A program made the translations under genes and the position numbers. A stretch of 64,000 nucleotides of DNA, from assembly GCF_006345805.1 (NCBI RefSeq), contig NW_021836179.1, positions 124,001 through 188,000 of the forward strand, written 5' to 3'. The notes beneath the pieces were generated by a model. It worked only from the letters and a program-made list of their open reading frames with translations. It had not been told where the DNA came from and searched no databases. Shown piece by piece: positions 4,360-58,487 of this stretch. Each line of letters begins with the position of its first letter. The first letter of the stretch is position 1. Source of the DNA: Octopus sinensis (lineage: Eukaryota).

Positions 4360-4848
4360 TTCTCTGAGGAATCAAAATAGACCCAATCCTTGGTCTTTCT
4401 CACCACATTAAACTTTTACTCCTATCTTTATCCTTCTTTTTATAGTTTATTCCTTACAAATATTTCCACTGCAAACTTCACTGATATCTAAAGATGCTAT
4501 AAATTTAGAAAGTCATCAAAGAGTAACGAGAATGCAAAGCATCAGCTAATGAAATAGAAAAATGTTGCTATTAATCTCAGTTCAGAGCAAACATTTCATA
4601 GAATTTCTACCAAAGATTTATAGAAATAGGCTTAGATGCATTCTGTGTAAACTTTTCCTCAAGACTTTAAAAGATGAAAAATGTTGAAGATGTATTCATT
4701 ATAAAAGGAAATTTCTTTGATGCCAATGTCATCCGTAAATCTGAAATGACAAAGAAACAGAATTAGATAGAGAGGAAAGATCAAAAGAGAAATGTTAAAA
4801 TATTTCTTTATTAATTAACAAATGACATCATATAACATTGGGTGAAAT

Positions 4849-6885: not shown

Positions 6886-7781
6886 AAGTACTAGTTACGC
6901 ACTGGAATCGATGTAATCGATTTAATCCCATTGTCTGTCCTTGTTTGTCCCCTCTGTGTTTAGCCCCTTGTGGGTAGTAAAGAAGTATAACTCTGTGTCA
7001 GGGTGTGGAGGGGTGATAGGTATTTGACTGTTATGTATGTCAGGTCGATTAAATAAGTACCAGTTACGCACTGGAATCGATGTAATCGATTTAATCCCAT
7101 TGTCTGTCCTTGTTTGTCCCCTCTGTGTTTAGCCCCTTGTGGGTAGTAAAGAAATATATCTCTGTGTCAGTGGGTGGAGGGGTGATAGGTATTTGACTGT
7201 TATGTATGTCAGGTCGATTAAATAAGTACCAGTTACGCACTGGGGTCGATGTAATCGACTTAATCCTTTTGTCTGTCCTTGTTTGTCCCCTCTGTGTTTA
7301 GCCCCTTGTGGGTAGTAAAGAAATATATCTGTGTCAGGGGGTGGAGGGGTGATAGGTATTTGACTGTTATGTATGTCAGGTCGATTAAATAAGTACCAGT
7401 TACGCACTGGGGTCGATATAATCGACTTAATCCCTTTGTCTGTCCCCTCTGTGTTTAGCCCCTTGTGGGTAGTAAAGAAGTATATCTCTGTGTCAGGGTG
7501 TAGAGGAGTGATAGGTATTTGACTGTTATGTATGTCAGGTCGATTAAATAAGTACCAGTTACGCACTGGGGTCGATATAATCGACTTAATCCCTTTGTCT
7601 GTCCCCTCTGTGTTTAGCCCCTTGTGGGTAGTAAAGAAGTATATCTCTGTGGAGGGGTGATAGGTATTTGACTGTTATGTATGTCAGGTCAATTAAATAA
7701 GTACCAGTTACGCACTGGGGTCAATGTAATCGACTTAATCCCTTTGTCTGTCCTTGTTTAGCCCCTTGTGGGTAGTAAAGC
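6886..7781 (+). repeat. SINE-derived minisatellite, ~5.5 units of 149-169 bp
   Basis: Units start at 6886, 7055, 7224, 7391, 7550 and 7699. Each is the SINE-2 3' body plus a unique spacer (GGGGTGGAGGGGTGATAGGTATTTGACTG...). Confidence 0.9.
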
Positions 7782-8107
7782 AATGCATTTTTTGGTATGG
7801 AGTTCCCTTCCTTGCGCCTCCCCACAAAGGGTCAGAATATTTATATTTATTTCTTTACTACCCACAAGGGGCTAAACACAGAATATTTGTATTGATAGTT
7901 TTACCTTTCGAATATTTCTCTCATAACTTTTTTTTAATTATTTTTTGGAATTTTCGTAAAATCTTTGCGTCTTTTGCATTGTAGCTTGGGAATTAATAGG
8001 ATCGTGCAAAAAATTCCAGTTCTTTCGGAATGAGGAATCCAATTAAATGCTGAAAAATAACGGAGGATGAAGTTAATGGTGGTTGCTGTTTGGGTACTAC
8101 TTGAGAA

Positions 8108-9087: not shown

Positions 9088-9496
9088 TTCTTCATTTTGA
9101 TTTCCATTTTGATCTCTCCTCTCTATCTAAATACTGTTTCTTTATTATTTCAGATTTACGGATGACATTGGCACAAAACAACTTTTTAACTTTGGATACA
9201 TCTGGAATATTTATCATATTTTAGAGAACAGATATAAAAATCCATCTCCTCTTAATCTGGGCTTGAATTACTGTGAAATATTTGCTCTTTCTCCGTCTGA
9301 TTATCTGGTGCTTTTGCATTCTAATTAAACTTGGATAAATTTATGCTTTGACAGCATCTTTAGATATCAGTGAAGATCAGAGTTGATAGCAGTTGATATT
9401 TCTAAGGAATCAATAATTATAAGAAGAACAAGGAGAAAACTATTTGATGTGGTGAGAAAAAGATAAAGAAAAACTTTAATATTGTGAGAAACTTCA

Positions 9497-9523
9497 ATGA
9501 TTCGGGCTGTTTTTATCCCTTAA
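9497..9523 (+). other. Conserved 8-codon uORF (MIRAVFIP*) ending 4 nt before the ZNF-B ATG
   Basis: ATG ATT CGG GCT GTT TTT ATC CCT TAA agag ATG; the same geometry recurs in ZNF-D, E1-3 and F. Confidence 0.7.
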
Positions 9524-9527
9524 AGAG

Positions 9528-10724
9528 ATGTCGAAAGAATTAGGAAAATCATATCACTGTAATATCTGCACGAAATCATTCTCTGAAAAACGTAATCTAA
9601 CAATTCACAAATGCTTTCATACAAAAAGGAAGCCTTTTGACTGTGATGTCTGTGGTAAATCATTCTCAGAAAATGCTGACTTGACTAAACACAAGCGTGT
9701 TCATACAGGAGAGAAGCCATATCACTGTGATATATGTCGTAAATCTTTCTCCCAAATATCCAACTTGACTAAGCACAAACGTATTCATACAAATGAAAAA
9801 CCATACAATTGCGATATCTGTGGTAAATCATTCTCTCAAATATCAAACATGACTTCTCATAAACGTATCCATACAAAAGAGAAGCCATTTCACTGTGCTA
9901 CCTGTGGTAAATCATTCTCTCAAATATCTAATTTGACTTCTCACAAACGTATTCATACAGGTGAGAAGACATATCACTGTAATACCTGCGGCAAATCATT
10001 CTCTGCTGGTGGTGACTTAACTACTCACATGCGTATTCATACTGGAGAGAAACCATATCACTGTGATGTCTGTGGCAAAGCTTTCACTACAAGTAGTGCT
10101 TTAACTTCTCACAGACGTATTCATACAGGTGAAAAGCCATATCACTGTGATACCTGTGGTAAATCATACCGCAGAAGTGGTGACTTGACGAAACATACTC
10201 GCATTCATACAGGTGAGAGGCCATTTCACTGTGACACCTGTGCTAAATCATTCTCTGAAAATGGTGCCTTAACTAAACATAAACGTATTCATACAGGTGA
10301 GAAGCCACATCACTGTGATGTCTGTGGTAAATCATTCACTCAAATGTCTAACCTGACTTCTCACAAACGTATTCATACAGGTGAGAAGCCATTCCATTGT
10401 GATGTCTGTGGTAAATCATTCTCTGCAAGTACTGCATTAACTTCTCACATACGTATTCATACAGGTGAGAAGCCATATCGCTGTGGTATTTGTGATAAGT
10501 CATTCCCTGTAAGCAGTGCCTTAACATTTCATGAGCGTATTCATACAGGGGAGAAGCCATTTCACTGTGATGTCTGTGGTGAATTGTTCTCTGCAAGTGG
10601 TGCTTTAACTTCTCACAGACGTATTCATACAGGTGAGAAGCCATTTCACTGTGATACCTGTGGCAAATCATTCTCTCAAAAAGGTAACTTAAAAACGCAC
10701 ATGTCTATCCATACAAAATTATGA
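9528..10724 (+). CDS. ZNF-B: C2H2 zinc-finger protein, 398 aa, 14 fingers
   Basis: Intact [14 protein letters not shown] leader, 14 finger repeats; conserved acceptor TTTATTATTTCAG| at 9153. Confidence 0.95.
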
Positions 10725-11748: not shown

Positions 11749-12565
11749 GTATTTCTTTACTGCCCATGAGGGGCTAAACATAGAGGGGACAAACAAAGTG
11801 ATTAAGTCAATTACATCGACCCCAGTGCGAAACTGGTACTTTATTTATCGACCCTGAAAGGATGAAAGGCAAAGTCGACCTCGGCAGAATTTGAACTCAG
11901 AACGTAAAGACAGACGAAATACCTATTTCTTTACTGCCCACAAGGGGCTAAACACAGAAGAGACAAACAAGGACAGAGAAATGGATTAAGTCAATTACAT
12001 TGTCCCCAGTGCGAAACTGGTACTTTATTTATCGACCCCCGAAAGGATGAAAGGCAAAGTCGACCTCGGCAGAATTTGAACTCAGAACGTAACGGCAGGC
12101 GAAATACCTATTTCTTTACTACCCACAAGGGGCTAAACACAGAAGAGACAAACAAGGACAGAGAAATGGATTAAGTCAATTACATCGACTCCAGTGCGAA
12201 ACTGGTACTTTATTTATCGACCCCCGAAAGGATGAAAGGCAAAGTCGACCTCGGCAGAATTTGAACTCAGAACGTAAAGACAGACGAAATACCTATTTCT
12301 TTACTGCCCACAAGGGGACAAACAAGGACAGAGAAATGGATTAAGTCAATTACATTGACCCCAGTGCGTAACTGGTACTTTATTTATCGACCCCCGAAAG
12401 GATGAAAGGCAAAGTCGACCTCGGCAGAATTTGAACTCAGAACGTAACGGCAGACGAAATGCCTATTTCTTTACTACCCACAAGGGGCTAAACACAGAAG
12501 GGACAAACAAGGACAGACATAGGTATTAAGTCAATTATATCGACCCCAGTGCGAAACTGGTACTT
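11749..12565 (-). repeat. Tandem array of ~4.5 5'-truncated SINE-2 units (~170-187 bp)
   Basis: Repeated TATTTCTTTACT.CCCACAAGGGG...GAAAGGATGAAAGGCAAAGTCGACCTCGGCAGAATTTGAACTCAGAACG. Confidence 0.9.
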
Positions 12566-16940: not shown

Positions 16941-17896
16941 ACTGGGAATTTTTAACGTTATTTTTCTCTACTTTTCTGAGTCGGTCTTTGAAAATTGTTA
17001 CGCTTGGCTTCTGAAGATGAAGGTAGAAGGGCCGGGTGTTATTCGTGGTGAAGGCCAGAATACTAGAAGGCATTCTTTCCGTGTACATAAACAACCAGCA
17101 CCCATTTACTGCCCGCATCACAGCAACAACATCAGGAACTTCATACAAGCACACACAAAAGCAACCTGTGTCCAGGTAAACTACGTGAATGCCATGTAAG
17201 AATCTACTTTTTCACAAAACACTCGACAGATTCGAGAAATGGTTTGTCCGCAACCTTATGCCTCTTCTTGGGAGTGTAAGAAACAACATTGCCCTGTCTT
17301 CTTTTTTCTCCAAAACACAATCTTCAACTTGGTCCTGAATAGAATGGATAGAATACACATTCATGTGCTTGCCTGTCTGTGTTTGTGTATATATGCACCT
17401 CTGTCCCCTTGTGTGTGTGTGTGTTATGTAACTATGTACCATGTTTGTATGTATGGATGTGCATCTTTATATGTGTGGATCCGTGTCTTCACATGTGTCT
17501 GTTCATATAGTCTACATACCTATCCGTCTGTATATTGATCTGTATATTGATAACAGCTTGTTATCACACACACATATCTTTTTTTTACTATGTGAATAAA
17601 TTTATGTTTACAAGTTATTTTCTGAATGGAATGGAGTTTAAAAAGCTACCTGTGTCCAGGTAAACTATGTGAATGCCATGTAAGAATCTACTAAAGTGGT
17701 TGACATAAGGAAGGGCATCTGACTATAAAAAAACATCTCAATGTGGTAACTTTGATGAGTATGGTTACTGTCAGGGGTTAAAGAAGTCAATGATTATTGC
17801 TAAGGGCACAAAGATTAAGCCATGCTTTAGCAGGGGAAACAGTTTTAAAATATTGGTTATTGTGGGATGTTTTAATGATGTCTGACAATGATACAA

Positions 17897-18631
<735 letters not shown>

Positions 18632-19079
18632 TCACCTCAGCATATAATTCCTTTTTTCTTTTTCTTGTAGTAATTTATTCCTTAGAAATATTTCTACTGC
18701 TATCAACTGTGATCTTTATCAATATCTAAAGATGCTGCAAACTCCTTTGTAAATATATTCAAGTTCAATTAGAATGCAAAAGCACCAGATAATGAGATGG
18801 AGAAATGTTGCTATGAATCTTCACTCAGGGCCAATATTTCACAGTAATTCAATCCTGGATTTATAGCAGTTGGGTTATTATATCTGTTCTCTAAAACGTT
18901 TTCCTTTCGTCTTAAAAAAACATGGTAAATATTCCAGATGTATCCAATGTACAAAAGTCGTTTTATGCCAATGTCATCCGTAAATCTGAAATAATAAAGA
19001 AACAGTTTTAGATTAGAGAGGAGAGATCAAAATGGAAATCGTTCAACGTCATATAACATTGGGTGAAATCTAAAAATTT

Positions 19080-22955: not shown

Positions 22956-23518
22956 GTGAGCTGTCGTCCATTATGTATATGTATGTATACACACACAATG
23001 TGAAGGTGAAGTTGGAGTTCACAAATTGTTAGGTTGTACCCAATGTTATATGATGTCGTTTGTTAATCAATATAGAAATGTAACAATCCTATTTTGATCT
23101 CTCCTCTCTATCTAAATACTGTTTCTTTATTATTTCAGATTCACAGATGACATTGGCATGAAACAACTTTTGTACATTGGAGATATCTGGAATATTTATC
23201 AGTTTTTTAAAGACTAGAGGAAAATATTATAGAGAACAGATATAATAACCCAACTGCTATAAATCCAGGATTGAATTACTGTGAAATATTTGCCCTGAGC
23301 AACATTTCTCCATCTCCTTACCTGTTGCTTTTGCATTCTAATTAAACTTGAATATATTTCTAAAGGGGTTTGCAGCATCTTTAGATATTGATAAAGATCA
23401 CAGTTGATTACAGTAGAAATATTTCTAAGGAAAAGGAAAAGGAAATTATATTCTGTGTTGAGAGAAGAAAGACAAGGGAAAAGTTTAATGGTTGGATCCA
23501 TTTGTATTCCTTAGAGAA

Positions 23519-27522: not shown

Positions 27523-27609
27523 TCCTCCAGGGAAAATAATCTCTGTAAATATTTAGAGAGCAACAGTATTGAATCACCAAATTAAGATTTAGATGAAGAT
27601 CAGGATTTA

Positions 27610-30281
27610 CTGAAGATTTTGGATTTACATTTCCAGTCAACTTCTGCTCTGAAACTTCTCCAGTCTCAACAAATTGGGTCCAGATGTCATTGCAGAGCTT
27701 CTTGCATCAATCGAGGGCATTCATAATACAATTCATGGCATTTGCATTCTTCTTCATTCACCCGGGTCTCTTATTACTGAAGATTTTGGATTTCCATTTC
27801 CAGTCAACTTCTGCTCTGAAACTTCTCCAGTCTCAACAAATTGGGTCCAGATGTCATTGCAGAGCTTCTTGCATCAATCGAGGGCATTCATAATACAATT
27901 CATGGCATTTGCATTCTTCTTCATTCACCCGGGTCTCTTATTACTGAAGATTTTGGATTTCCATTTCCAGTCAACTTCTGCTCTGAAACTTCTCCAGTCT
28001 CAACAAATTGGGTCCAGATGTCATTGCAGAGCTTCTTGCATCAATCGAGGGCATTCATAATACAATTCATGGCATTTGCATTCTTCTTCATTCACCCAGG
28101 TCTCTTATTACTGAAGATTTTGGATTTCCATTTCCAGTCAACTTCTGCTCTGAAACTTCTCCAGTCTCAACAAATTGGGTCCAGATGTCATTGCAGAGCT
28201 TCTTGCATCAATCGAGGGCATTCATAATACAATTCATGGCATTTGCATTCTTCTTCATTCACCCAGGTCTCTTATTACTGAAGATTTTGGATTTCCATTT
28301 CCAGTCAACTTCTGCTCTGAAACTTCTCCAGTCTCAACAAATTGGGTCCAGATGTCATTGCAGAGCTTCTTGCATCAATCGAGGGCATTCATAATACAAT
28401 TCATGGCATTTGCATTCTTCTTCATTCACCCAGGTCTCTTATTACTGAAGATTTTGGATTTCCATTTCCAGTCAACTTCTGCTCTGAAACTTCTCCAGTC
28501 TCAACAAATTGGGTCCAGATGTCATTGCATGGCTTCTTGCATCAATCGAGGGCATTCATAATACAATTCATGGCATTTGCATTCTTCTTCATTCACCCAG
28601 GTCTCTTACTACTGAAGATTTTGGATTTCCATTTCCAGTCAACTTCTGCTCTGAAACTTCTCCAGTCTCAACAAATTGGGTCCAGATGTCATTGCAGAGC
28701 TTCTTGCATCAATCGAGGGCATTCATAATACAATTCATGGCATTTGCATTCTTCTTCATTCACCCAGGTCTCTTATTACTGAAGATTTTGGATTTCCATT
28801 TCCAGTCAACTTCTGCTCTGAAACTTCTCCAGTCTCAACAAATTGGGTCCAGATGTCATTGCAGAGCTTCTTGCATCAATCGAGGGCATTCATAATACAA
28901 TTCATGGCATTTGCATTCTTCTTCATTCACCCAGGTCTCTTATTACTGAAGATTTTGGATTTCCATTTCCAGTCAACTTCTGCTCTGAAACTTCTCCAGT
29001 CTCAACAAATTGGGTCCAGATGTCATTGCAGAGCTTCTTGCATCAATCGAGGGCATTCATAATACAATTCATGGCATTTGCATTCTTCTTCATTCACCCA
29101 GGTCTCTTACTACTGAAGATTTTGGATTTCCATTTCCAGTCAACTTCTGCTCTGAAACTTCTCCAGTCTCAACAAATTGGGTCCAGATGTCATTGCAGAG
29201 CTTCTTGCATCAATCGAGGGCATTCATAATACAATTCATGGCATTTGCATTCTTCTTCATTCACCCAGGTCTCTTATTACTGAAGATTTTGGATTTCCAT
29301 TTCCAGTCAACTTCTGCTCTGAAACTTCTCCAGTCTCAACAAATTGGGTCCAGATGTCATTGCAGAGCTTCTTGCATCAATCGAGGGCATTCATAATACA
29401 ATTCATGGCATTTGCATTCTTCTTCATTCACCCAGGTCTCTTACTACTGAAGATTTTGGATTTCCATTTCCAGTCAACTTCTGCTCTGAAACTTCTCCAG
29501 TCTCAACAAATTGGGTCCAGATGTCATTGCAGAGCTTCTTGCATCAATCGAGGGCATTCATAATACAATTCATGGCATTTGCATTCTTCTTCATTCACCC
29601 AGGTCTCTTATTACTGAAGATTTTGGATTTCCATTTCCAGTCAACTTCTGCTCTGAAACTTCTCCAGTCTCAACAAATTGGGTCCAGATGTCATTGCAGA
29701 GCTTCTTGCATCAATCGAGGGCATTCATAATACAATTCATGGCATTTGCATTCTTCTTCATTCACCCAGGTCTCTTATTACTGAAGATTTTGGATTTCCA
29801 TTTCCAGTCAACTTCTGCTCTGAAACTTCTCCAGTCTCAACAAATTGGGTCCAGATGTCATTGCAGAGCTTCTTGCATCAATCGAGGGCATTCATAATAC
29901 AATTCATGGCATTTGCATTCTTCTTCATTCACCCAGGTCTCTTATTACTGAAGATTTTGGATTTCCATTTCCAGTCAACTTCTGCTCTGAAACTTCTCCA
30001 GTCTCAACAAATTGGGTCCAGATGTCATTGCAGAGCTTCTTGCATCAATCGAGGGCATTCATAATACAATTCATGGCATTTGCATTCTTCTTCATTCACC
30101 CAGGTCTCTTATTACTGAAGATTTTGGATTTCCATTTCCAGTCAACTTCTGCTCTGAAACTTCTCTAGTCTCAACAAATTGGGTCCAGATGTCATTGCAG
30201 AGCTTCTTACATCAATCGAGGGCATTCATAATACAATTCATGGCATTTGCATTCTTCTTCATTCACCCGGGTCTCTTATTA
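27610..30281. repeat. 167-bp satellite, 16 near-identical units
   Basis: Exact 167-nt period from 27610 to 30281; single-copy in units 2 and 3 and near 60215-60385 (inverted, diverged). Confidence 0.97.
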
Positions 30282-31072
30282 CTGTGCAGCACCACATGTT
30301 TATGATAAAATTTCACTTCTACACAGAGAATATCCAGATTCTTGTCTTTGGTAAGGCTCCAAGGTCATGTTTTTTTGGGGGTTTTTTTCGCAAAACACTC
30401 GACAGATTCGAGAAATGGTTTGTCCGCAACCTTATGCCTCTTCTTGGGAGTGTAAGAAACAACATTGCCCTGTCTTCTTTTTTCTCCAAAACACAATCTT
30501 CAACTTGGTCCTGAATAGAATGGATAGAATACACATTCATGTGCTTGCCTGTCTGTGTTTGTGTATATATGCACCTCTGTCCCCTTGTGTGTGTGTGTGT
30601 TATGTAACTATGTACCATGTTTGTATGTATGGATGTGCATCTTTATATGTGAGGATCTGTGTCTCCAAATGTGTCTGTTCATATAGTCTACATACCTATC
30701 CGTCTGTATATTGATCTGTATATTGATAACAGCTTGTTATCACACACACATATCTTTTTTTACTATGTGAATAAATTTATGTTTACAAGTTATTTTCTGA
30801 ATGGAATGGATTTTAAAAAGCAACCTGTGTCCAGGTAAACTATGTGAATGCCAGGTAAGAATCTACTAAAGTGGCTGAAGTGGTTGGCATAGGGAAGGGC
30901 ATCTGGCTGTAAAAAAACCATCTCAATGTGGTAACTTTGATGAGTATGGTTTCTGTCAGGAGTTAATGATTGCTGTTAAGGGCACAAAGGTTAAGCCGTG
31001 ATTTACCAGAGAGAATGGTTTTAAGATTTCGGCTGTTGTTGGATGTTCTAATGAATTCTGACAATGATACAA

Positions 31073-32020: not shown

Positions 32021-32567
32021 TTCTCTAAAGGATACAAATCAACCCAACCATTGAAGTTTCTCACAGTATCAAATTTTTCCTTTACCGTTCTTCTCTAACC
32101 AAATCATATAATTTCCTTTTTCTTGTTCTTTTGTAATAATTTATTCCTCAGAAATATTTCTACTGCTATCAACAGTGATCATTATCAATATCTAAAGATG
32201 CTGTTTAATTAGAATGCAAAAGCACCCGGGTAATGAGATGGAGAAATGTTGCTATGAATCTCAGGTGAGAGCCAATATTTCACAGCAATCCAACCCTAGA
32301 TTTATAGCAGTAGGGTTATTATATCTGTTCCCTAAGACATTTTCCTTTAGTCTTTAAGACATGATAGATATTCCAGATGTATCCAATATACAGAAGTCGT
32401 TTTGTGCCTATGTCATCTGTGAATCTGAAATAATAAAGAAACAGTTTTAGATAGAGAGGAGAGATCAAAATGGAAATGTTACAACATTTCTTTATTAATT
32501 AACAAATGGCATCATATAACATTGGGTGAAATCTAAAAATCTGTAGACTACAACTACTCCATCACAC

Positions 32568-39744: not shown

Positions 39745-40290
39745 TTCTCTAAAGGATACAAATCAACCCAACCATTGAAGTTTCTCACAGTATCAAATTT
39801 TTCCTTTACCGTTCTTCTCTGACCAAATCATATAATTTCCTTTTTCTTGTTCTTTTGTAATAATTTATTCCTCAGAAATATTTCTACTGCTATCAACAGT
39901 GATCATTATCAATATCTAAAGATGCTGTTTAATTAGAATGCAAAAGCACCGGGTAATGAGATGGAGAAATGTTGCTATGAATCTCAGGTGAGAGCCAATA
40001 TTTCACAGCAATCCAACCCTAGATTTATAGCAGTAGGGTTATTATATCTGTTCCCTAAGACATTTTCCTTTAGTCTTTAAGACATGATAGATATTCCAGA
40101 TGTATCCAATATACAGAAGTCGTTTTGTGCCTATGTCATCTGTGAATCTGAAATAATAAAGAAACAGTTTTAGATAGAGAGGAGAGATCAAAATGGAAAT
40201 GTTACAACATTTCTTTATTAATTAACAAATGACATCATATAACATTGGGTGAAATCTAAAAATCTGTAGACTACAACTACTCCATCACAC

Positions 40291-47808: not shown

Positions 47809-48354
47809 TTCTCTAAAGGATACAAATCAACCCAACCATTGAAGTTTCTCACAGTATCAAATTTTTCCTTTACCGTTCTTCTCTGACCAAATCATATAAT
47901 TTCCTTTTTCTTGTTCTTTTGTAATAATTTATTCCTCAGAAATATTTCTACTGCTATCAACAGTGATCATTATCAATATCTAAAGATGCTGTTTAATTAG
48001 AATGCAAAAGCACCGGGTAATGAGATGGAGAAATGTTGCTATGAATCTCAGGTGAGAGCCAATATTTCACAGCAATCCAACCCTAGATTTATAGCAGTAG
48101 GGTTATTATATCTGTTCCCTAAGACATTTTCCTTTAGTCTTTAAGACATGATAGATATTCCAGATGTATCCAATATACAGAAGTCGTTTTGTGCCTATGT
48201 CATCTGTGAATCTGAAATAATAAAGAAACAGTTTTAGATAGAGAGGAGAGATCAAAATGGAAATGTTACAACATTTCTTTATTAATTAACAAATGACATC
48301 ATATAACATTGGGTGAAATCTAAAAATCTGTAGACTACAACTACTCCATCACAC

Positions 48355-48399: not shown

Positions 48400-48960
48400 A
48401 TTCACACAAGAAAAAAGCAGCAAGAATGGATTAGTTGTTCAGTACAATTGTTTCATACAAAGAACAGATTTATTAAAAGCTGCAAATACAAGTGTCCCGT
48501 ATTCATCAGCCAAAACACATATGAGTTTACCAAACCCCCTAGGATGTTTGGAAAACTCATATGTGTTTTGGCTGATGAATACAGGACACTTGTATTTGCT
48601 GCAATATTTGCAGCTTTAAATAAATCTGTTCTTCGTATGAAACAATTGTACTGAACAACTGATCCATTCTTGTTGCTTTTTTCTTGTTTATAATCACCCC
48701 ACATTATTTTATGGTTAATACCATAAAGATTTCTGGTGCATATAAGTTAAGTACCACATTCATGTGAATTCATTGGAACTCACTTGAATCTTAATTATTT
48801 TACTGAAAAGAAATATATACATATATATAATATATTAAATTAGAGACAAAACCACTATTAGGCAAATCATATAATATATTACTATAAAATTGGATTTAAT
48901 CCTAAATCTGATTTTTCCCTGTAAGTTTGGATTTATTCCCTAATATTTATTATTATTATC

Positions 48961-49898
48961 TGTCCTTGGTCCCCTCTTGTTTGTGGCATACATTAACGAC
49001 ATAGATGCCAATTTAAAGAATGCCACAGTATTGAAATATGCAGACGACATCAAGCTGTACCTTGAAATCAAGAGGGCAGATCCTGATGTCTACAACTCTT
49101 TCCTGCAATCAGACCTAGACACAATGCAGCAATGGATCACAGACTGGCAACTGAAACTGGCTGTGGACAAGTGTACCACCATGCATTTTGGGAGAAAAAA
49201 CCCTGCGTTCACATATTCCCTCCACATCACTGATATCAAGAAATCCTCTTGCGAGCGTGACCTAGGCATCACTGTCAGCAGTGATTTGCGTTGGACAAAG
49301 CATATCTCTAAAATTGTCAAGAAGGCCGAGGGTGTCTTGGCATCACTCAGCAGGTCTTTTGTTAGCCGCTCTCCAGCCATCTATTTAAAACTGTATACAG
49401 CTATGGTACGACCACACTTGGAATTCACATCATCAGTTTGGAACCCCTATCTTGCACAGAACATTGACCTCCTGGAATCTGTCCAGAGACGTGCAACCAA
49501 ACGCATACCCTCCATCAGACACCTACCATATTCTGAGTGCCTTGTTTCCCTGGGCATGGATTCACTGAAGCTCCGGCGTCTGGCGACGGACTTGGTAAAC
49601 ACCCACAAGGTTATCAACCACCTCACCAACAACAACACTGAACACCTTTTTGATCTCCATGTGTCTAACACACGTGGACATGCCTACAAAGTCAGAAAAC
49701 AACACAGCTCCCATGACTTTCGGAAACATTTTTTCACGCTGAGAGTTGCTGAAGCATGGAACAAACTGCCTGCGTCAGTTGTTGACTGCCATGACACTGC
49801 ATCCTTTAAGGCCCTCATGCTTTCTGAAATCCGCCGAAACTACACCTGATTATATATACACTTTAGATGAGTTGTAGTGCACCTGAGCACTGTACACA

Positions 49899-49925
<27 letters not shown>
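48961..49925 (+). mobile_element. CR1/L2-clade LINE copy in the ZNF-E3 intron
   Basis: As 40897-41865 (one A>T amino-acid change). Confidence 0.92.
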
Positions 49926-49942
<17 letters not shown>

Positions 49943-51861
49943 TATATATACGCACATACATTGGATGAGGAGAGCTGTGTAAATAAAGTACCACTCCCAA
50001 ACAGTTGAATGAATCCGGGGTTGAGGTAGCCCCAGGAAGACATGGGATGAGGTAGTGAAACATGGCCTTTGAACATTATGCTTCACAGAGGCAATGACAA
50101 AAAAACCGAGACCTCTGGAGATATGCTGCGACTGCGAAGAACTGGCAAAGTGCCATTTCTCATAAGGTCCACTGCGACAAGAATACTCGTGCAATTCATT
50201 GATGCAATTTCGACTGTGAATCGATTTTACGTTTGTAAAATAGGAAATTAGGCCGTGTTGTGTTGAGGGTGTAATTCCGTCTGTTCTTTGGTGAAACTTA
50301 GTCTAACTTTGGAAGATTCTGCTCAACATCGCTCACTGAAGCGTAGTGTTGTGTGCTCTGGAGGAGGAAAACAATCCGAATTAGATATGACCAGAGAAGG
50401 GGGAGGCAGCAAGGAAGGCCACAGTCGTCCCTCAGGAACCACAAAGTGTAAAGATGAAAACCTGGTCATCTTATACACGGTATAAGTATTCCCGGATTTC
50501 TGGAAGCCGGATAAGAGATCCGGCACCTACGATCGATCGATCGATAGATAGGTGTGTATATCTTACCTGTTATGCTACACAAATCAATATTTAGCGTGAA
50601 AATATGTTTACTCACCTCAAAATCTCCGTGAAAAACAAACAAAAACACTTTACGGTTCTTCTCCCGCGTCAGGCAGGATGTAGCGGAAACGGAAGTGTGG
50701 GGTGTCATGTGATAAAAGTAATCCGCCCCCTCTTTCGATCTGCGGGGATCCCCCCCCCCGTCCCCAGGACCAACTCCTTAAGGGGTACTTATTCCCTCCG
50801 CTCCAAAAGGGGAGGAGGAAATAGGGACTATGAAAACTCTGCGCTCGATATAATCGTCTCGTCCCCTTCTCCCCAAATCGCTCCCTTCTGGCAAAATTTG
50901 AAACCCTTATTTCATAATAATAATAATAATAACGAAATTATTGTATCCAGGGCTCAGGTGCCCCACAACCTGTCAGAAAGTGTGTAATAAAGCATATGGA
51001 GTAATGTAGAAATGCCTGGGAAGCGAACAGTGTATGAGTCAGATACGTGCTTGTGTGTGTATGGAGGGGAGAAAGATCAGGTGTAGTGTTGGTGAATCTC
51101 AGGAAGCATGGAATATTATGATCAATAATTGCCTAAGAGGCTAAATTACGGTATGGGTACCGTTGCAGTCAAACTGGTGAACATTCTTTTGTTTACATTT
51201 GAAGAAGAAGATCGTTGCTCACCGTAAAAATTTCTATTTTTTTTATATATGTGGGATGGGGGAAGGGTGTCTTTTTCAAGTCGGCATATTCCCGGATTTC
51301 TGGAAGCCAGGTAAGAGGTCCGGCACGTATGATCAATCGATAGATAGGTATGTAAAGGCGGCGAGCTGGCAGAATCGTTAGCACGCCGGGCGAAATGTGT
51401 AGCCGTATTTCGTCCGCCGCTACGTTCTGGGTTCAAATTCCGCCGAGGTCGACTTTGCCTTTCATCCTTTCGGGGTCGATAAATAAAGTACCAGCTATCC
51501 ACTGGGGTCGATGTAATCGACTTAATGCCTTTCTTTGTCCCCTCTATGTTTAGCCCCTTGTGGGCAATAAAGAAATATATGCAATACAAATCAATATTTA
51601 GTGTGAAAATATATTTACTCACACCAAAATCTCCGTGTAAAACATACAAAAATATGTTATTGATATTCTCCTGGGTGAAACAGGTTGTAACGGAAAACAC
51701 TCGGCGAGAAACGGAAGAAAATTTGAAGAAAGAAGGAAAAAAAATAGTAATAATATTTTGATGCAAATCACCATGGTTACTGTGGTTAATATCTTGGCTG
51801 TGATAAACGCATCTTTGTTGTTCCCAGCAACGGCCTTGGTGGCCATGTTCTTAAAGAAATT

Positions 51862-52063
51862 ACTCTCTTTTATTTGTTTCAGTCATTTGACTGCGGCCAT
51901 GCTGGAGCACCGCCTTTAGTCGAGCAAATCGACCCCGGGACTTATTCTTTTGTAAGCCCAGTACTTATTCTATCGGTCTCTTTTTGCCGAACCACTAAGT
52001 GACGGGGACGTAAAGACACCAGCATCGGTTCTCAAGCGATGTTGAGTGGGCGGACAAACACAG

Positions 52064-52114
<51 letters not shown>

Positions 52115-52272
52115 CATATATATGACAGGCTTCTTTCAGTTTCCGTCACAAGGCACTGGTCGGTCTGGGGCTATAGCAGAAGACACTTGCCCAAGATGCC
52201 ACGCAGTGAGGCTGAACCCCGAACCATGTGGTTAGTTAGCAAGCTACTTACCACACAGCCACTCCTGCGCCT
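51862..52272 (-). mobile_element. SINE-1 (3'-deleted in units 1 and 2 at ~35716-35978 and ~43783-44045)
   Basis: Family match; the deletion junction in units 1 and 2 is at a TAAAGA microhomology. Confidence 0.82.
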
Positions 52273-53984
52273 ATATATATATTTTATATTTTTCGTTCCA
52301 GCACACGATCTCAGATCAGGTCACTTGCTATGCAAGTACATCTCCATAATAAAAATATATATCATCCTTTCCCTGAACAGCCACCTCAGGGGCACCCAAC
52401 AAGTTGAAGGGGCTCACTCACTCGCTATAGAGTAACTACTCAGACACGAGTCAGCGCCACCAATGATGATATACATGTTGTCATGATAATGGAATTGCTT
52501 TTATTTTTACTCCTGAATATTTTGGAAGATTTAAAAGCAGAAGTTTCTAAGCAGCCATGGATCCAATTATTGCTAAGCGTTCGCTTCATCATCATCATCA
52601 TCGTTTAACATCCGTTTTCCGCGCTAGCACGGGTTGATGGTTCGACCGGGGATCTGGGAAGCCAGGGGCTGCACCAGGCTCCAGTCTGATCTGGCAGTAT
52701 TTCTACAGCTGGATGCCCTTCCTAACGCCAACCACTCCATGAGTGTAGTGGGTGCTTCTTACGTGCCACTGGCACAAGTGCCAGGGGAGTCTGGCAGCGG
52801 CTACGATCGGTTGGTGCTATTAACAATTTCATAAAATTGACATGGCTTAATACTTTGTCCGCATCAGCATTTATAAGTGGTACAATTAGAAGTATCAAAA
52901 TTAACTTAAATATTCATCGTCTGAAAGTCTCCACTTTTGGATGTGTGCATGTATATATATATGTACATACATACATATATATGTATATACATACATATAT
53001 ATGTATATACATAGGCGCAGGAGTGGCTCTGTCGTAAGTAGCTTGCTTACCAGCCACATGGTTCTGGGTTCAGTCCCTCTGCATGGCATCTTGGGCAAGT
53101 GTCTTCTGCTATAGCCTTGGGCCGACCAATGCCTTGTGAGTGGATTTGGTAGACGGAAACTGAAAGAAGTCTGTCATATATATGGTTATATATATATGTG
53201 TGTGTGTATGTGTTTGCCCCTCTAGCATTGAACAAATTTCAACTATATATATATCATCATCATCATCATCATTTAGCGTCCGCTTTCCATGCTAGCATGG
53301 GTTGGACAGTTCAACTGGGGTCTGGGAAGCCAGAAGGCTGCACCAGGCCCAGTCTGATCTGGCAATGTTTCAACGGCTGGATGGCCTTCCTAACGCCAAC
53401 CACTCCGTGAGTATAGTGGGTGCTCTTTACGTGGCTGGTGGGGGCTAAACACAGAGGGGCCAAACAAGGACAGACAAAGGGATTAAGTCAATTACATCGA
53501 CCCCAGTGCGAAACTGGTGCTTTACTTATCGACCCCGAAAGGATGAAAGGCAAAGTCGACCTCGGCAGAATTTGAACTCAGGTCAACTTTGTCTTTCATC
53601 CTTTCGGGGTCGATAAATAAAGTACCAGTTTCGCACTGGGGTCGATGTAATCGACTTAATCCCTTTGTCTATCCTTGTTTGTTCCCTCAGTGTTTAGCCC
53701 CTTGTGGGTAGTAAAGAAATATATATATAGTTGAAATTTACAGAAAAGCAAAACACAAAGACGGGTGTGTGAACAAGCAAGTTTATTGGTTTCAAACACA
53801 GGAAAGTGAGAGTCTTTTATGTTTCAAGCCTATGCTCTTCAGCAGAGAGGAAAAAGAGAAAATAAACAGAGAGAGAGAGAGAGAAAAGAAAAGAAAAAGA
53901 TTTAGCGGTCAAGTATGACAGGAGAGGTAGAAAGAATATATTGTTTGCTGTTGGGTGTTTTAATGAATTTTGACAACGATATAA

Positions 53985-55100
53985 TCAAACTTTTACATGG
54001 ATGGATGCATGCCTGGTTAAGTTACTTCTCTGAGAGAATGATTTACCACAGACATCACATTGATACGGTCTCTCCCCTGTATGAATACGTTTGTGACTAG
54101 TTAAGCTGTTATTCTCAGAGAATGATTTACCACAGAAGTCACAATGATATGGTTTTTCTCCCGTATGAGTACGTCTATGTTTAGTCAAGTCACCATCTCG
54201 AGAGAATGATTTACCACAGACATCACATTGAAATGGCTTTTCTCCAGTGTGAATAACCTTGTGTTGACTTAAACAAGAAATTCTAGAGAATGATTTACCA
54301 CAGACATCACAATTATATGGTCTTTCTCCTGTATGAGTACGTTTGTGTTGAGTGAAGTCACCAATTCGAGAGAATGATTTATCGCAGACATCACATTGAA
54401 ATGGCTTTTCTCCAGTGTGAATACGTTTGTGTTGAATTAAATAGGAGGTTGTCGAGAATGATTTACCACAGATAACACAATGATATGGTTTTTCTCCCGT
54501 ATGAGTACGTGTGTGTGTAGTCAAGTCACTACTCCCACAGAATGATTTACCACAGACATCACAGTGAAATGGTTTTTCTCCTGTGTGAATACGCATGTGT
54601 TTAGTTAAGCTACATTTTGTAGAAAGTGTTTTACCACAGACATCACAGTGATATGGTGTCTCCCCTGTATGAATACATTTGTGTTTAGTTAAGTTTTTCT
54701 TTTCAGAGAATGATTCACCACAGACATCACACTCGTATGGTTTCTCACCTGTATGAATACGTATGTGTTTAGTTAAATTGTTCTTTTCAGAGAATGATTG
54801 ACCACAGGTATCACAGTGAAATGGCTTCTCACCTGTATGAATATATTTGTGTCTAATTAAGCTATCTTTTGTAGAAAATGATCTACCACAGATAACACAG
54901 CGATGTGGTTTCTCTCCTGTATGAATACGTATGTGTTTAATTAAGTTACCGTTTTGACAGAATGATTTACCACAGGTAACACAGCGAAATGGTTTCTCAC
55001 CTGTATGAACACGAATGTGTTTAACCAAGTTACTATTTGTAGAGAATGATTTACCACAAATTTTACAATGATATCCTAATTTTCCTAATGCTTTTGACAT
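53985..55100 (-). CDS. ZNF-F: C2H2 zinc-finger protein, 371 aa, 13 fingers
   Basis: Conserved ATG (MSKALGKL) at 55100; acceptor at 55527; uORF at 55105-55131. Confidence 0.94.
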   Translation of the reverse strand: MSKALGKLGYHCKICGKSFSTNSNLVKHIRVHTGEKPFRCVTCGKSFCQNGNLIKHIRIHTGEKPHRCVICGRSFSTKDSLIRHKYIHTGEKPFHCDTCGQSFSEKNNLTKHIRIHTGEKPYECDVCGESFSEKKNLTKHKCIHTGETPYHCDVCGKTLSTKCSLTKHMRIHTGEKPFHCDVCGKSFCGSSDLTTHTRTHTGEKPYHCVICGKSFSTTSYLIQHKRIHTGEKPFQCDVCDKSFSRIGDFTQHKRTHTGERPYNCDVCGKSFSRISCLSQHKVIHTGEKPFQCDVCGKSFSRDGDLTKHRRTHTGEKPYHCDFCGKSFSENNSLTSHKRIHTGERPYQCDVCGKSFSQRSNLTRHASIHVKV

Positions 55101-55717
55101 TTTTCTAAGGGATACAAACAGACCCAACCATTGAAGTTTCTCACAGTATTAAATTTTCCCCTTATCTTTCTTCTCTCACCACAGAATGTAATTTTCTTAT
55201 TCTCGTTCTTGTAATTTATTCCTTGGAAATATTTCAACTGTTATCAACCTTGATTTTATTGATATCCAAAATTCTGCAAACTCCCTTTGTAAATATATTC
55301 AAGTTTAATTAGAATGCAAAAGCCCCAGATAACGAGATGGGCAAATGTTGCTATGAATCTTCACTCAGGGCAAATATTTCACAGTAATTCAATCCTGGAT
55401 TTATAGCAGTTGGGTTATTATATCTGTTCTCTAAAACGTTTTCCTTTCGTCTTCAAAAAAACATGGTAAATATTCCAGATGTCTCCAATGAACAAAAGTC
55501 GTTTTGTGCCAATGTCATCTGTGAATCTGAAATAATAAAGAAACAATATTTAGATTTAGAGGAGAGATCAAAAGAGAAATGTTACAACATTTCTTTATTA
55601 ATTAACAAATGACATCATATAACATTGGGTGAAATGTAAAAATTTGTAAACCACAATTACACATGCACATTGAGTGTGTATGTATATGTGTATATATATA
55701 CATACATATATGTAAAG

Positions 55718-55875
55718 AATTTAAGTATTTATACACGAAAGAGGTGGCCTTTCCCAGGACACCTTACATGCTAGAAAGGGCAGTCAAAGCCCAAATCACG
55801 AATAAAAGCACTTTCAAAAGGAATGAAAATATAAAATATTTTTGTAGTTATCCTCACAACTACACCTAGACATTG

Positions 55876-55906
<31 letters not shown>

Positions 55907-56174
55907 CACGTGACCGACAAGTCCATCAGATGTAGTTACACATCGCTGGTCACAATGCGTTCGCATTGTTTTAGCCTTCGAATGACGCCACCCCGCTGGA
56001 ACAGAAGGAAGAGTGGTGAAAGAGTACAGCAGGGATCGCCACCACCCCCTGCCGGAGCCTCGTGGAGCTTTTAGGTGTTTTCGGTCAATAAACACTCACA
56101 ACGCCCGGTCTGGGAATCGAAACCGCGATCCTACGACTTCGAGTCCGCTGCTCCTAACCACTGGGCCATTGCGC

Positions 56175-56225
<51 letters not shown>

Positions 56226-57122
56226 AATATATATACACAAAAGTGGTAACCTTTGATAGGACACCTTACATGCTAGAAAGGGCAGTCAAAGCCCAACCCA
56301 CGAATAAAAGCAAATTCAAAGGGAATGAAAATGAATTAATTTGCTATCCATACATCATCAGTGCCATGGATTTGAAGATTATAATGCACAAGTATGCAGC
56401 ACGCGTGATTTTGGTGCAATTTGCTGCATAAATCTGCATTAATCTGATGAAGTACGGATTGAAAATTTATTTATTTGCAAATTGAAACAGAAAATTGAGT
56501 TTGAGGGTAACTACAAAAATATTTTGGCGATCTTTCGTCTCTAGTAGACCTTTCCGTCGATTTCCGTAAAAAAAATTTTTTTTGTTACATATGGGCTTGC
56601 GGGAACTTTTGAAGTAATATACATACATATACACACATACATAGATACATACACACACACACATACATGCATACATACATATACACATACACCGAGTAAA
56701 AAATTTTAGTTATCTCTTTATTTCACACATTACTCTGTCTCTTCACACACACTAACAGAAGCACTTCACTTACACAACATACTGCCTGTCTCCCACACCC
56801 CACCAAACACACACACACACACATGTACATCAATGCTTCCCCTGAACGGTAACTTCAAAAGAACTTCCCTCGTCATACAATCGCTTTCTCTTAGTCTCTT
56901 TCGCTCTCATAACTTGAAAAGTTCCCGCAAGCCCATGTGTAAAAAAAAAAATTTTTTACGGAAATCGACGGAAAGCTCTACAAGAGACGAAAGATTGCCA
57001 ATATTTTATATTTTCATTCCTTTTGAAATTGCTTTTATTCGTGGTTTGGGCTTTGACTGCCCTTTCTAGCATGTAAGGTGTCCTCGGAAAGGGCATCCCT
57101 TTTGTGTATAAATACTTAAATT
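55718..57122. mobile_element. Nested foldback/non-autonomous DNA element(s)
   Basis: Outer IR 55718-55840 / 57000-57122; inner IR ~56520-56615 / 56912-57007; internal insert 55843-56515 with its own short TIRs and 10-bp direct repeat AAAATATTTT. Confidence 0.7.
55916..56175 (-). mobile_element. SINE-4 with tRNA-like head
   Basis: GGCGCAATGGCCCAGTGGTTAGG..GGTTTCGATTCCCAGACC (A/B boxes) followed by ~190 nt of non-tRNA body. Confidence 0.7.
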
Positions 57123-57399
57123 GCTCATACACTCCTCAATATGAACATACGTTGACTATTGACATTATTACTAAAATTATTCTAAATTTTCTACCTTTAC
57201 CATTTTCACAGTATATATATATCTGTAAATGTAATATGTGACTATTATTCGGTAGCCAAGATAAAACTCTGAGTTTCGGATGCCGAGGTGGAGATCCACA
57301 ACACCTTCTCTTCGGTTGTCCGTCGATCGGAAAAATGACCATTTCCCTCCATTTATCGTAAGTTTTTTGGTTTTATTCACTAGAGAGCGTTGAGTTTAT

Positions 57400-57745
57400 T
57401 GTTGTCATATGATACCCCGTACTTCCGGTTCCGCTGCAGCTTTTTTGACTCTGGAGAAGAAACAAAACGTGTTTTTGTTTGTTTTTCACGGAGATTTTGA
57501 GGTGAGTAAACATATTTTCACTCTAAATATTGATTTGTGTAGCATAACGCGTAAGATATCCACACCTATCTATCGATCGATCGTAGGTGCCGGATCTCTT
57601 ATCCGGCTTCCAGAAATCCGGGAATACTTATACCGTGTATCGAGTATTCGGTTCCGCCCTTCCTTTCTTCGAAGATGACCAGGTTTTCATCTTTACACTT
57701 TGTGGGTCCTGAGGGACTGTGGCCTTCCTTGCTGCCGCCCCCTTT
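57400..57745 (+). promoter_or_regulatory. Promoter/exon-1 module of ZNF-G
   Basis: GTCATATGAT (57404), ACTTCCGG (57421), donor GAG|GTGAGT at 57502; homologous to 21015-21380. Confidence 0.65.
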
Positions 57746-58099
57746 CTTTTTCTGGAAGCCAGGTAAGAGGTCCGGCACCCCGATCGATAGATAGGTGTGG
57801 ATATCTTACCTGTTATGCTTTACAAATCAATATTTAGTGTGAAAATATATATATATATAATTAAATTATTGTATACATTGCCCAGGTGCACCACAACCTG
57901 TCAGAAAGTGCGTATAAAACATATGCAGTAATGTACAATTGTCTGAGAAGTGAACAGTGTATGAGTCAGATACATGCTTGTGTGTGTATGGAGGGGAGAA
58001 AATCAGGTGTAGTGTTGGCGAATCTCAGGAAGCATGGAAGTTTTGAACGATGCAGTGTTCCGACAACTAACAACCGATGCCGGCAGTCTGTATATATAT

Positions 58100-58152
<53 letters not shown>

Positions 58153-58487
58153 GTGTGATGGAGTAGTTGTAGTCTACAAATTTTCAGATTTCACCTAAAG
58201 TTATTTGATGTCATTTGTTATTCAATATAGAAATGTCGTAACATTTCCGTATTGATCACCCCTCTCTATGTCTAATATTGTTTCTTTATTATTTCAGATT
58301 CACAGATGACATTGGCACATCTGTTGTACATTGGATACATCTGGAATATTTACCATGTTTTTTGAAGACCAAAAGAAAATGTTTTAGAGAACAGATATAA
58401 TAACCCAACAGTTAGAAAGCTTTGAGCTGAGATTTATAGAAACATTACTCCCTTTCATTATCTGGTATGTTTGCATTCTAATTGAAC

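What the first reader, a model, noticed from the sequence alone, without database searches (positions are those of the whole stretch)
9497..9530. Position-locked 8-codon uORF in front of the ZNF start codons, with natural gain- and loss-of-function variants
Seen: an AUG lies exactly 31 nt upstream of the main AUG, out of frame, and closes 4 nt before it in six genes: B (MIRAVFIP*), D (23488-23514, MVGSICIP*), E1/E2/E3 (32051, 39775, 47839; MVGLICIL*) and F (55131, MVGSVCIP*). The stop position is kept although the codon varies (TAA/TAG) and the fingers have diverged heavily. In the 30-finger gene A both start (AGG at 4390) and stop (CAG) are lost with spacing preserved. In C the stop became TGG, and in G the region is deleted. 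Established: uORFs ending a few nt before a CDS usually damp translation through leaky scanning or poor reinitiation. Inference: a family-wide translational dosage control on these ZNFs, tuned gene by gene.
Basis: partly seen in the sequence, partly recalled or inferred. Interest (0 to 1): 0.72.

Follow-up and report, generated by a model that had tools for sequence, protein, structure and literature searches.

The report
Young uORF in octopus zinc-finger genes
A tiny 8-codon reading frame really does sit just in front of several tandemly duplicated octopus zinc-finger genes, but it looks like a recent one-base accident copied along with the genes, not a conserved control device, and whether it affects translation is untested.

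Summary
In B, D, E1-3 and F an ATG lies 31 nt upstream of the main ATG, out of frame, with a stop ending 4 nt before it. C keeps the ATG but lost the stop, A has AGG..CAG, and G has the stretch deleted.

The window is Octopus sinensis (VCDQ01005994.1:124001-188000). The genes are young tandem duplicates sharing about 600 nt of upstream sequence. E1-3 are 98.7-99.8% identical copies, so the six cases are four lineages.

Retention matches descent alone. The uATG triplet is intact in 6 of 7 lineages, as are 9 of 42 leader triplets. The stop triplet took three independent hits.

Sister subfamilies and gene A read AAGGA or AAGAA at the uATG column, so the uATG is a derived G>T gain. A never had it.

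I tested my own rival, that the T-rich tract plus TAG is a 3' splice site. It is weak: 84th-96th percentile of AG sites, no conserved donor, and the homologous stretch is probably coding in relatives.

The uATG is therefore probably in the mRNA, though no transcript data could be reached. Its context is poor (T at -3) and the main ATG has a purine, so I predict a mild leaky-scanning brake resembling CEBPB. This is an ordinary uORF of low interest.

The parts
9497..9523 (+). Gene B u[17 protein letters not shown]. The spacer AGAG is 9524-9527 and the main ATG is at 9528.
23488..23514 (+). Gene D uORF, MVGSICIP*, stop TAG. The main ATG is at 23519.
32025..32051 (-). Gene E1 uORF, MVGLICIL*. The main ATG is at 32020.
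39749..39775 (-). Gene E2 uORF. E2 is a near-identical tandem copy of E1. The main ATG is at 39744.
47813..47839 (-). Gene E3 uORF. E3 is a near-identical tandem copy. The main ATG is at 47808.
55105..55131 (-). Gene F uORF, MVGSVCIP*. The main ATG is at 55100.
18555..18623 (-). Gene C. The uATG is kept and the stop is mutated to TGG. The result is a 22-codon uORF overlapping the main ATG (18592) out of frame.
   Evidence: O. vulgaris has the same state.
4364..4390 (-). Gene A stretch homologous to the uORF, with no uORF (AGG...CAG). This is the ancestral-like state.
58467..58481 (+). Gene G. The original stretch is deleted. An independent new 4-codon uORF (MFAF*) ends 6 nt before the main ATG at 58488.
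23258..23264 (+). TATAAAT box of gene D at -261. The same box is at 55399-55405(-) for F and is conserved in 6 of 7 lineages. It is the candidate promoter element that defines the putative leader.
9100..9213 (+). Most conserved upstream block of the gene unit (example shown: gene B). It is shared with other octopus ZNF subfamilies, and its role (promoter or 3' splice site) is not resolved.

Best explanation
The feature is a young, lineage-specific upstream ORF in the 5' leader of one tandemly duplicated C2H2 zinc-finger subfamily of Octopus sinensis / O. vulgaris.

Origin. One G>T change (AAGGA to AATGG) in the common ancestor of genes B-I created an AUG. By chance it lay in frame with a TAG or CAG-type triplet seven bases before the main AUG. 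The resulting 8-codon uORF was then copied passively with each gene duplication. Since then it has drifted: the stop changed in B, was lost in C, and the stretch was deleted in G.

Predicted action (inferred, not shown). The uAUG has a poor context (U at -3, mostly G at +4). The main AUG has a purine at -3 in an A-rich context. Most 40S subunits should therefore scan past the uAUG. The minority that translate the uORF terminate 4 nt before the main AUG, too close to reinitiate there, and are lost. The outcome would be a mild, constitutive reduction of ZNF output. It would be stronger in C, where the uORF overlaps the start.

Nothing indicates that selection maintains it.
For: Shown:
- Sequence and coordinates.
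- The gene copies share about 600 nt of upstream sequence that occurs only in front of these ORFs. E1-3 are 98.7-99.8% identical.
- Retention of the ATG and stop is no better than that of neighbouring leader triplets.
- The uORF peptide is not conserved ([32 protein letters not shown]).
- There is no conserved RNA structure.
- Gene A and the MEKSE, MENSE and MAEET subfamilies have G where B-I have the T of the ATG.

Evidence that the uAUG is in the mRNA:
- The distance from the anchor RAAATATTT to the first finger is collinear: 164 nt in a MENSE gene against 168-173 in the family. The annotated start codon of MENSE/MEKSE genes therefore maps to about -60..-68 of the family.
- The family leader aligns to their N-terminal coding sequence (P = 0.002-0.014 against shuffles for three comparisons, 0.17 for the fourth).
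- The acceptor-like site at -5 scores only in the 84th-96th percentile of all AG sites in the window.
- No GT is conserved between -420 and -32.
- Between the conserved TATAAAT and -32, genes B-I hold 7 ATGs against 30.6 expected (CAT 27 against 23.8). Upstream of the TATA the count is 43 against 46.6.

The expected behaviour of such a uORF follows from the scanning model and from CEBPA/CEBPB (PMC11109482).
Against: - No transcript, TSS or ribosome data could be obtained. Presence of the uAUG in mature mRNA is therefore inferred.
- The ATG depletion rests on non-independent paralogs. It is absent in gene A and in the sister subfamilies, so it may be a lineage accident.
- The homology of the leader to coding sequence in relatives is only moderately significant. 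An alternative local alignment also exists.
- With only about 7 lineages, and with O. vulgaris identical, weak purifying selection on the uATG cannot be excluded.
- The block -44..-1 has no indels, while -135..-45 has many. That could reflect a spacing constraint.
Confidence: 0.6

Rival explanations
1. The uORF is a selected, family-wide translational dosage control, kept position-locked by purifying selection and tuned gene by gene through the A, C and G variants.
For: - The ATG is present in 6 of 7 lineages, and -44..-1 has no indels despite many indels just upstream.
- It is the only ATG between the TATA box and the main ATG in D and F, in a leader otherwise depleted of ATG.
- G, which lost the stretch, has a new mini-uORF 6 nt before its ATG.
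- The geometry equals the functional CEBPB uORF, with a 4-nt spacer.
Against: - Retention equals the neutral expectation from neighbouring triplets, and the stop triplet was hit three times in 7 lineages.
- The copies are recent duplicates, and the O. vulgaris orthologues are identical, so nothing has been tested by time.
- Polarity is reversed for A.
- Sister subfamilies lack it.
- The weak uAUG context predicts a small effect.
- One new ATG within 30 nt in G is about what chance gives.
Confidence: 0.12
2. The uATG is not in the mature mRNA. Either the T-rich tract plus TAG/CAG is the 3' end of a 5'-UTR intron whose acceptor lies 2-4 nt before the main ATG, or transcription starts downstream of -31.
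For: - All lineages keep a T-rich tract followed by an AG at -6/-5 or -4/-3. The A variant (CAG) and the shifted AGs in B and C are neutral for an acceptor but not for a stop codon.
- Other subfamilies also show a T-rich tract plus AG just before their ATG. An example is O. bimaculoides gtttattttcctcaagagATG.
- No transcript evidence contradicts it.
Against: - The acceptor score is unremarkable, in the 84th-96th percentile of 7351 AG sites.
- No GT is conserved between -420 and -32. The GTGAGA motifs would give introns of 40-80 nt and are missing in D and degenerate in E.
- The homologous stretch is probably continuous coding sequence in MEKSE/MENSE genes.
- The ATG-poor zone runs from the TATA box to -32, which an intron would not explain.
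- The TTTAATA at about -53 is absent in C and D.
Confidence: 0.2
3. A C/EBP-type isoform switch. Ribosomes that translate the uORF skip the main AUG and reinitiate at a downstream in-frame AUG, producing N-terminally truncated ZNF proteins.
For: The geometry matches CEBPB: a short out-of-frame uORF, a 4-nt spacer and a suboptimal uAUG.
Against: The next ATGs downstream of the main start are out of frame or far away, and they are not conserved among paralogs. The first is at +68/+290 (frame 1) in E1 and +290 (frame 1) in E2/E3, +374 (frame 1) in F, +29 (frame 1) in D and +84 (frame 2) in B.
Confidence: 0.03

Closest known systems
CEBPB / CEBPA regulatory uORF (vertebrate C/EBP transcription factors)
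   Same: Both are short uORFs with a suboptimal start codon that end just before the main AUG. The CEBPB uORF is 36 nt long and ends 4 nt before the primary start. The CEBPA uORF has six codons and a 7-nt spacer (PMC11109482). In both, translation of the uORF and initiation at the adjacent AUG are mutually exclusive, and the main AUG is reached by leaky scanning.
   Different: In C/EBP the length and spacing are conserved across homologues, and a downstream in-frame AUG receives reinitiating ribosomes to make a shorter isoform. Here conservation is only identity by descent among young paralogs, and no conserved in-frame downstream AUG exists.
Generic animal uORFs
   Same: It is an upstream AUG with an in-frame stop in the leader, the peptide is not conserved, and the expected effect is a modest reduction of main-ORF translation. 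Roughly half of animal mRNAs have uORFs (abstract of PMC10123092).
   Different: Nothing essential differs. The only particular feature is that one mutation was propagated through a tandem gene cluster, giving several copies at the same offset.
Delayed-reinitiation uORF systems (GCN4, ATF4)
   Same: They also use short uORFs upstream of a transcription-factor ORF (from my own knowledge).
   Different: Those systems rely on several uORFs and on long spacers that allow eIF2-dependent reinitiation. Here the 4-nt spacer precludes that logic, and no second, conserved uORF is present.
Start-codon turnover in the octopus ZNF superfamily (seen here, not a named system)
   Same: Sister subfamilies place the start codon about 60 nt further upstream (MEKSE/MENSE). 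MDKEK-type genes keep an ATG at that upstream site as a 4-codon uORF (ATG GAA GTT GAA TGA). Leader and N-terminal coding sequence interconvert, and short uORFs come and go.
   Different: The -31 uATG of genes B-I is not the relic of that older start. It is a separate new ATG in another frame.

Membership tests
Functional upstream ORF (uORF) | The AUG lies upstream of the main AUG inside the mature 5' leader, meaning downstream of the TSS and not spliced out. | tested here: inconclusive
   No transcript contigs were retrievable. Indirect evidence favours inclusion: a weak acceptor score, no conserved donor, homology to exonic coding sequence in relatives, and an ATG-poor zone from the TATA box to -32.
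Functional upstream ORF (uORF) | An in-frame stop codon defines a short ORF. | tested here: met
   There are 8 codons plus TAA or TAG in B, D, E1-3, F and the extra paralog I. The feature is not met in A (no ATG). In C the uORF has 22 codons and overlaps the main start.
Functional upstream ORF (uORF) | The start and stop are retained above the neutral expectation in relatives. | tested here: not met
   The uATG is intact in 6 of 7 lineages, like 9 of 42 leader triplets. The stop triplet is intact in 4 of 7, with three independent hits. O. vulgaris is identical, so it adds no power. Sister subfamilies lack the ATG.
Functional upstream ORF (uORF) | Ribosomes initiate on it, and its removal changes main-ORF output. 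| not testable with these tools
   This needs Ribo-seq or reporter assays.
C/EBP-type uORF switch | A short out-of-frame uORF with a weak start ends no more than 7 nt before the main AUG. | tested here: met
   The spacer is 4 nt. The uAUG has T at -3, and the main AUG has G or A at -3. The C/EBP geometry is taken from PMC11109482.
C/EBP-type uORF switch | A downstream in-frame AUG is used for reinitiation and gives a truncated isoform. | tested here: not met
   The next ATGs are out of frame or distant, and they are not conserved among paralogs.
3' splice site (5'-UTR intron acceptor) | A polypyrimidine tract plus YAG that scores clearly above background. | tested here: inconclusive
   The site scores in the 84th-96th percentile of all AG sites in the window. 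The PWM was approximate and built from memory.
3' splice site (5'-UTR intron acceptor) | A conserved GT donor upstream at a workable distance. | tested here: not met
   No GT is invariant between -420 and -32. The GTGAGA candidates give introns of 40-80 nt and are lost in D and degenerate in E.
3' splice site (5'-UTR intron acceptor) | The boundary is respected in paralogous genes. | tested here: not met
   In MEKSE/MENSE genes the ORF runs uninterrupted through the stretch that aligns to family -68..-1.

The most novel reading that the evidence does not exclude
A newly born CEBPB-like uORF with a 4-nt spacer was fixed in the founder of an expanding octopus ZNF clade. It acts as a dosage brake on freshly duplicated transcription factors. 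The cluster would then carry a natural allelic series: A without it, B/D/E/F with it, C with an overlapping stronger version, and G with an independent replacement. That would suggest that young ZNF duplicates are buffered translationally.
Probability: 0.1. Interest if true: 0.45.

Novelty: new member of a known kind. Interest (0 to 1): 0.2.

Why it matters
If it were functional, it would show that a single point mutation can install a translational brake which tandem duplication then spreads through a rapidly expanding transcription-factor cluster. That bears on how cephalopods tolerate hundreds of young ZNF genes.

As the evidence stands, it is an ordinary uORF whose apparent conservation is identity by descent. 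The practical lesson is that position-locked motifs shared by recent paralogs are not evidence of constraint. Outgroup paralogs are also needed before calling a variant a loss.

Tried and rejected
1. Splice-acceptor reading of the T-rich tract plus TAG, which was my first idea. I largely rejected it: the acceptor score is only in the 84th-96th percentile, there is no conserved donor, and the homologous stretch is coding in relatives.

2. G as a processed or intron-less copy that reveals exon junctions. Rejected, because the deletion is not bounded by GT..AG.

3. Transcript evidence through exact-protein look-ups (B, C, D, E, F, G, P0122). Only genome assemblies carried the proteins, or there was no record.

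4. Three protein searches aimed at O. bimaculoides orthologues. All were swamped by generic C2H2 proteins, and hits were limited to at most about 1.75x the query length. Two cluster look-ups found nothing.

5. Comparison with 'O. sinensis'. This was vacuous, because the window itself is O. sinensis. The true second species, O. vulgaris, is identical in this region.

6. Conserved RNA hairpin around the two AUGs. None was found (-0.66 kcal/mol, no covariation).

7. Conserved uORF peptide. None: most differences change the amino acid.

8. The uORF as a relic of the ancestral upstream reading frame. Rejected, because the frame differs.

9. ATG depletion as a general signature of these leaders. It was not replicated in gene A or in sister subfamilies, so I use it only as weak support.

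10. Literature. No paper in the library links cephalopod ZNFs to uORFs. Albertin 2015 is not held. Two cephalopod and ZNF papers say nothing on 5' gene structure.

Full report
**1. What the window is**

The 64-kb window is 100% identical to Octopus sinensis GCA_006345805.1 scaffold VCDQ01005994.1:124001-188000 (loci L003 and L004). It is about 98.4% identical to O. vulgaris chromosome OX597841.1 (L001, L002, L005).

It holds a cluster of C2H2 zinc-finger genes. Each is a single long ORF that starts M-S-K-x-L-G-K-S about 10 residues before the first finger.

| Gene | Strand | Main ATG | Length |
|---|---|---|---|
| A | - | 4359 | 847 aa |
| B | + | 9528 | 398 aa |
| C | - | 18592 | 231 aa |
| D | + | 23519 | 398 aa |
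| E1 / E2 / E3 | - | 32020 / 39744 / 47808 | 315 aa |
| F | - | 55100 | 371 aa |
| G | + | 58488 | 372 aa |

There is also a finger exon without an ATG (H, 61509-62129).

**2. The observation**

- B, D, E1-3 and F have an ATG at -31. It is out of frame with the main ORF, followed by seven sense codons and TAA or TAG, then four bases, then the main ATG.
- A reads AGG...CAG with identical spacing.
- C keeps the ATG but has TGG at the stop. Its uORF therefore runs 22 codons across the main ATG.
- G lacks about 227 nt between CTAATTGAAC and its ATG.

I add three observations.
- G has an independent 4-codon uORF (ATG TTT GCA TTC TAA, 58467-58481) ending 6 nt before its ATG.
- One more paralog, 'I', just beyond the window (L006:19608) carries the E-type uORF.
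- A, B, C and E have further mini-uORFs between -49 and -185.

**3. Is it more than chance or descent?**

The genes are duplicates of a compact unit. Paralog homology starts about 600 nt upstream of the ATG, just after a (TA)n(CA)n microsatellite. It runs through the ORF to about 35-50 nt past the stop. The upstream unit occurs nowhere else in the window. E1-E3 are 7.7-8.1-kb tandem units that are 98.7-99.8% identical. The 'six genes' are therefore four lineages, or seven when A, C and I are counted.

In the gap-free block -44..-1 I compared the uORF-defining triplets with all other triplets.
- The uATG is intact in 6 of 7 lineages, but so are 9 of the 42 triplets.
- The stop triplet is identical to the majority in only 4 of 7, where the median is 5.
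- The stop triplet has taken three independent substitutions: T>C in A, A>G in C and G>A in B.
- Minimum substitutions per column are 0.33 for the uATG, 1.0 for the stop and 0.61 for the rest of the block.

The uORF peptide is not conserved, and there is no conserved RNA structure. The O. vulgaris orthologues of A, B, C, D, F and G are base-for-base identical in this stretch, so the second species adds no power.

Conclusion: the pattern is what identity by descent predicts. There is no signal of purifying selection, and with so few lineages a weak one cannot be excluded either.

**4. Polarity of the variants**

I fetched four other octopus ZNF subfamilies.
- MAEET... in O. bimaculoides (L007).
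- MDKEK, MNKEK and MNKEQ... in O. sinensis (L009).
- MENSE... in O. sinensis (L008).
- MEKSE... in O. vulgaris (L010).

Their upstream regions are homologous to the family's. At the uATG column the sequences read as follows.

| Gene or subfamily | Sequence at the uATG column |
|---|---|
| A | CAAGGATTGGG |
| MENSE | GAAGGATTTGA |
| MEKSE | AAAGGAACTGA |
| MAEET | AAAGAATTGAG |
| B-I | CAATGGTTGGG |

The ATG is therefore a derived G>T change in the ancestor of B-I. Gene A never had it. A TAG at the position of the stop also occurs in subfamilies without the uATG: MDKEK has gcaTAGaggcATG, and MENSE has ttcTAGaag, where it lies inside the codons CTA GAA. It was probably there before the ATG arose, although the alignment at that point is less secure.

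**5. Is the uATG in the mRNA?**

No transcript data could be reached, so this rests on indirect evidence.

My first rival was that the T-rich tract plus TAG/CAG, 4 nt before the ATG, is a 3' splice site. That would place the uATG in an intron and would explain why CAG in A is harmless. The evidence goes against it.
- With an approximate acceptor matrix the site ranks only in the 84th-96th percentile of the 7351 AG sites in the window.
- No GT is conserved between -420 and -32. The GTGAGA motifs would make introns of 40-80 nt and are absent in D and degenerate in E.
- In MENSE and MEKSE genes the annotated ORF starts further upstream and runs uninterrupted through the stretch that aligns with family -68..-1.
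- The distance from a shared anchor (RAAATATTT) to the first finger is 164 nt in MENSE and 168-173 nt in F and E. The regions are therefore collinear.
- The family leader aligns to the MEKSE N-terminal coding region better than shuffles do (P = 0.002-0.014). For F against MENSE the result is P = 0.17.

A TATAAAT box at -261 to -305 is conserved in 6 of 7 lineages, and it also appears in MNKEQ. Between it (+30 nt) and -32, genes B-I contain 7 ATGs where 30.6 are expected, against CAT at 27 observed and 23.8 expected. Upstream of the box ATG is at 43 against 46.6. Dinucleotide shuffles give P = 0.001-0.12 per paralog for B-I (0.001-0.04 for five of the six; paralog I 0.12). D and F have no ATG at all between the box and -31.

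This fits an unspliced leader of about 230-275 nt. However, the paralogs are not independent, and the depletion is absent in A and in the sister subfamilies, so I treat it as weak support. Overall I put the probability that the uATG is in the mature mRNA at about 0.8.

**6. How it most likely works (inferred)**

- The uAUG context is U at -3 in all copies and G at +4 in most.
- The main AUG has G or A at -3 within AGAAAUG or AAAAAUG.
- By the scanning model most 40S subunits will pass the uAUG.
- Those that translate the 8 codons terminate 4 nt before the main AUG, too close for reinitiation there.
- No conserved in-frame AUG lies downstream to rescue them.
- The expected effect is a modest constitutive reduction. 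It would be stronger in C, whose uORF overlaps the start, and absent in A.

**7. Comparison with what is known**

The geometry is that of the CEBPB uORF (36 nt, 4 nt before the primary start) and the CEBPA uORF (six codons, 7-nt spacer) (PMC11109482). It lacks their two defining extras: conservation of length and spacing across homologues, and a downstream in-frame AUG that makes a short isoform. It is best filed as an ordinary uORF, and roughly half of animal mRNAs have one (PMC10123092 abstract). No paper in the held library links cephalopod ZNFs with uORFs.

**8. Verdict**

| Question | Verdict |
|---|---|
| Observation | confirmed |
| Interpretation | partly supported: the architecture is real and the mechanism plausible, but conservation, family-wide tuning and 'loss in A' are not supported |
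| Novelty | new member of a known kind |
| Interest | 0.2 |

The decisive data are splice and TSS mapping from existing octopus RNA-seq, a wider octopod comparison, and reporter assays.

Noticed in passing
window 9100-9213 (B). Also 4679-4793, 18926-19039, 23091-23198, 32365-32477, 40088-40200, 48152-48264, 55467-55580 and 58243-58352. Outside the window: L007:14601, L008:9669 and 17211, L009:27857, L010:9198.: A block about 400 nt upstream of the ATG (…TTTTGATCTCTCCTCTCTATCTAAATACTGTTTCTTTATTATTTCAG ATTCACGGATGACATTGGCA…) is the best-conserved part of the gene unit. It is shared by four other ZNF subfamilies, including one in O. bimaculoides. It looks like a very strong 3' splice site (99th percentile) followed by an inverted CCAAT box, but it could equally be a promoter element with an Inr-like TCAGAT. 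Its role is unresolved.
   Followed up: partly
window about 30000-53700: There is a recent tandem triplication of a 7.7-8.1-kb unit that carries the 315-aa ZNF gene (E1, E2, E3). The units are 98.7-99.8% identical.
   Followed up: partly
window 27607-30284: A 167-bp satellite has 16 copies at 99% identity. Other arrays of about 169-185 bp lie at 6886-7784 and 11787-12565.
   Followed up: no
window 58467-58481: Gene G, which lost the original uORF stretch, has an independent 4-codon uORF (MFAF*) ending 6 nt before its ATG. It was created by GTGCTT>GTATGTT relative to its paralogs.
   Followed up: yes
L009:10001, 19549, 2578 (+) and 27428 (-): MDKEK, MNKEK and MNKEQ-type ZNF genes carry short uORFs at -89 to -56. 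One of them (ATG GAA GTT GAA TGA) sits where MEKSE/MENSE-type genes have their start codon. This suggests start-codon turnover between leader and N-terminal coding sequence in this superfamily.
   Followed up: partly
window 17850-17897 and the 3' flanks of all the genes: About 35-50 nt after the stop codon is conserved in all paralogs (TGATTGTATCATTGTCAG...). The NCBI model P0122 for gene C splices from inside the finger array to the CAG of this motif, giving a 120-aa product with a non-finger tail.
   Followed up: no
window 48533-64000 against L006 (CM016888.1:12778373-12799491): The right part of the window has a 99.2% identical copy on a chromosome-level scaffold of the same O. sinensis assembly. 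The window's unplaced scaffold may therefore be an alternative haplotype or a duplicated assembly of that region.
   Followed up: no
window 61509-62129: A seven-finger ORF (H) has no start codon and opens directly after tcgtcgTAG, an acceptor-like site. In O. vulgaris the region falls inside a multi-exon gene call (L005:11452-18052). It belongs to a different ZNF type from the single-exon family.
   Followed up: no
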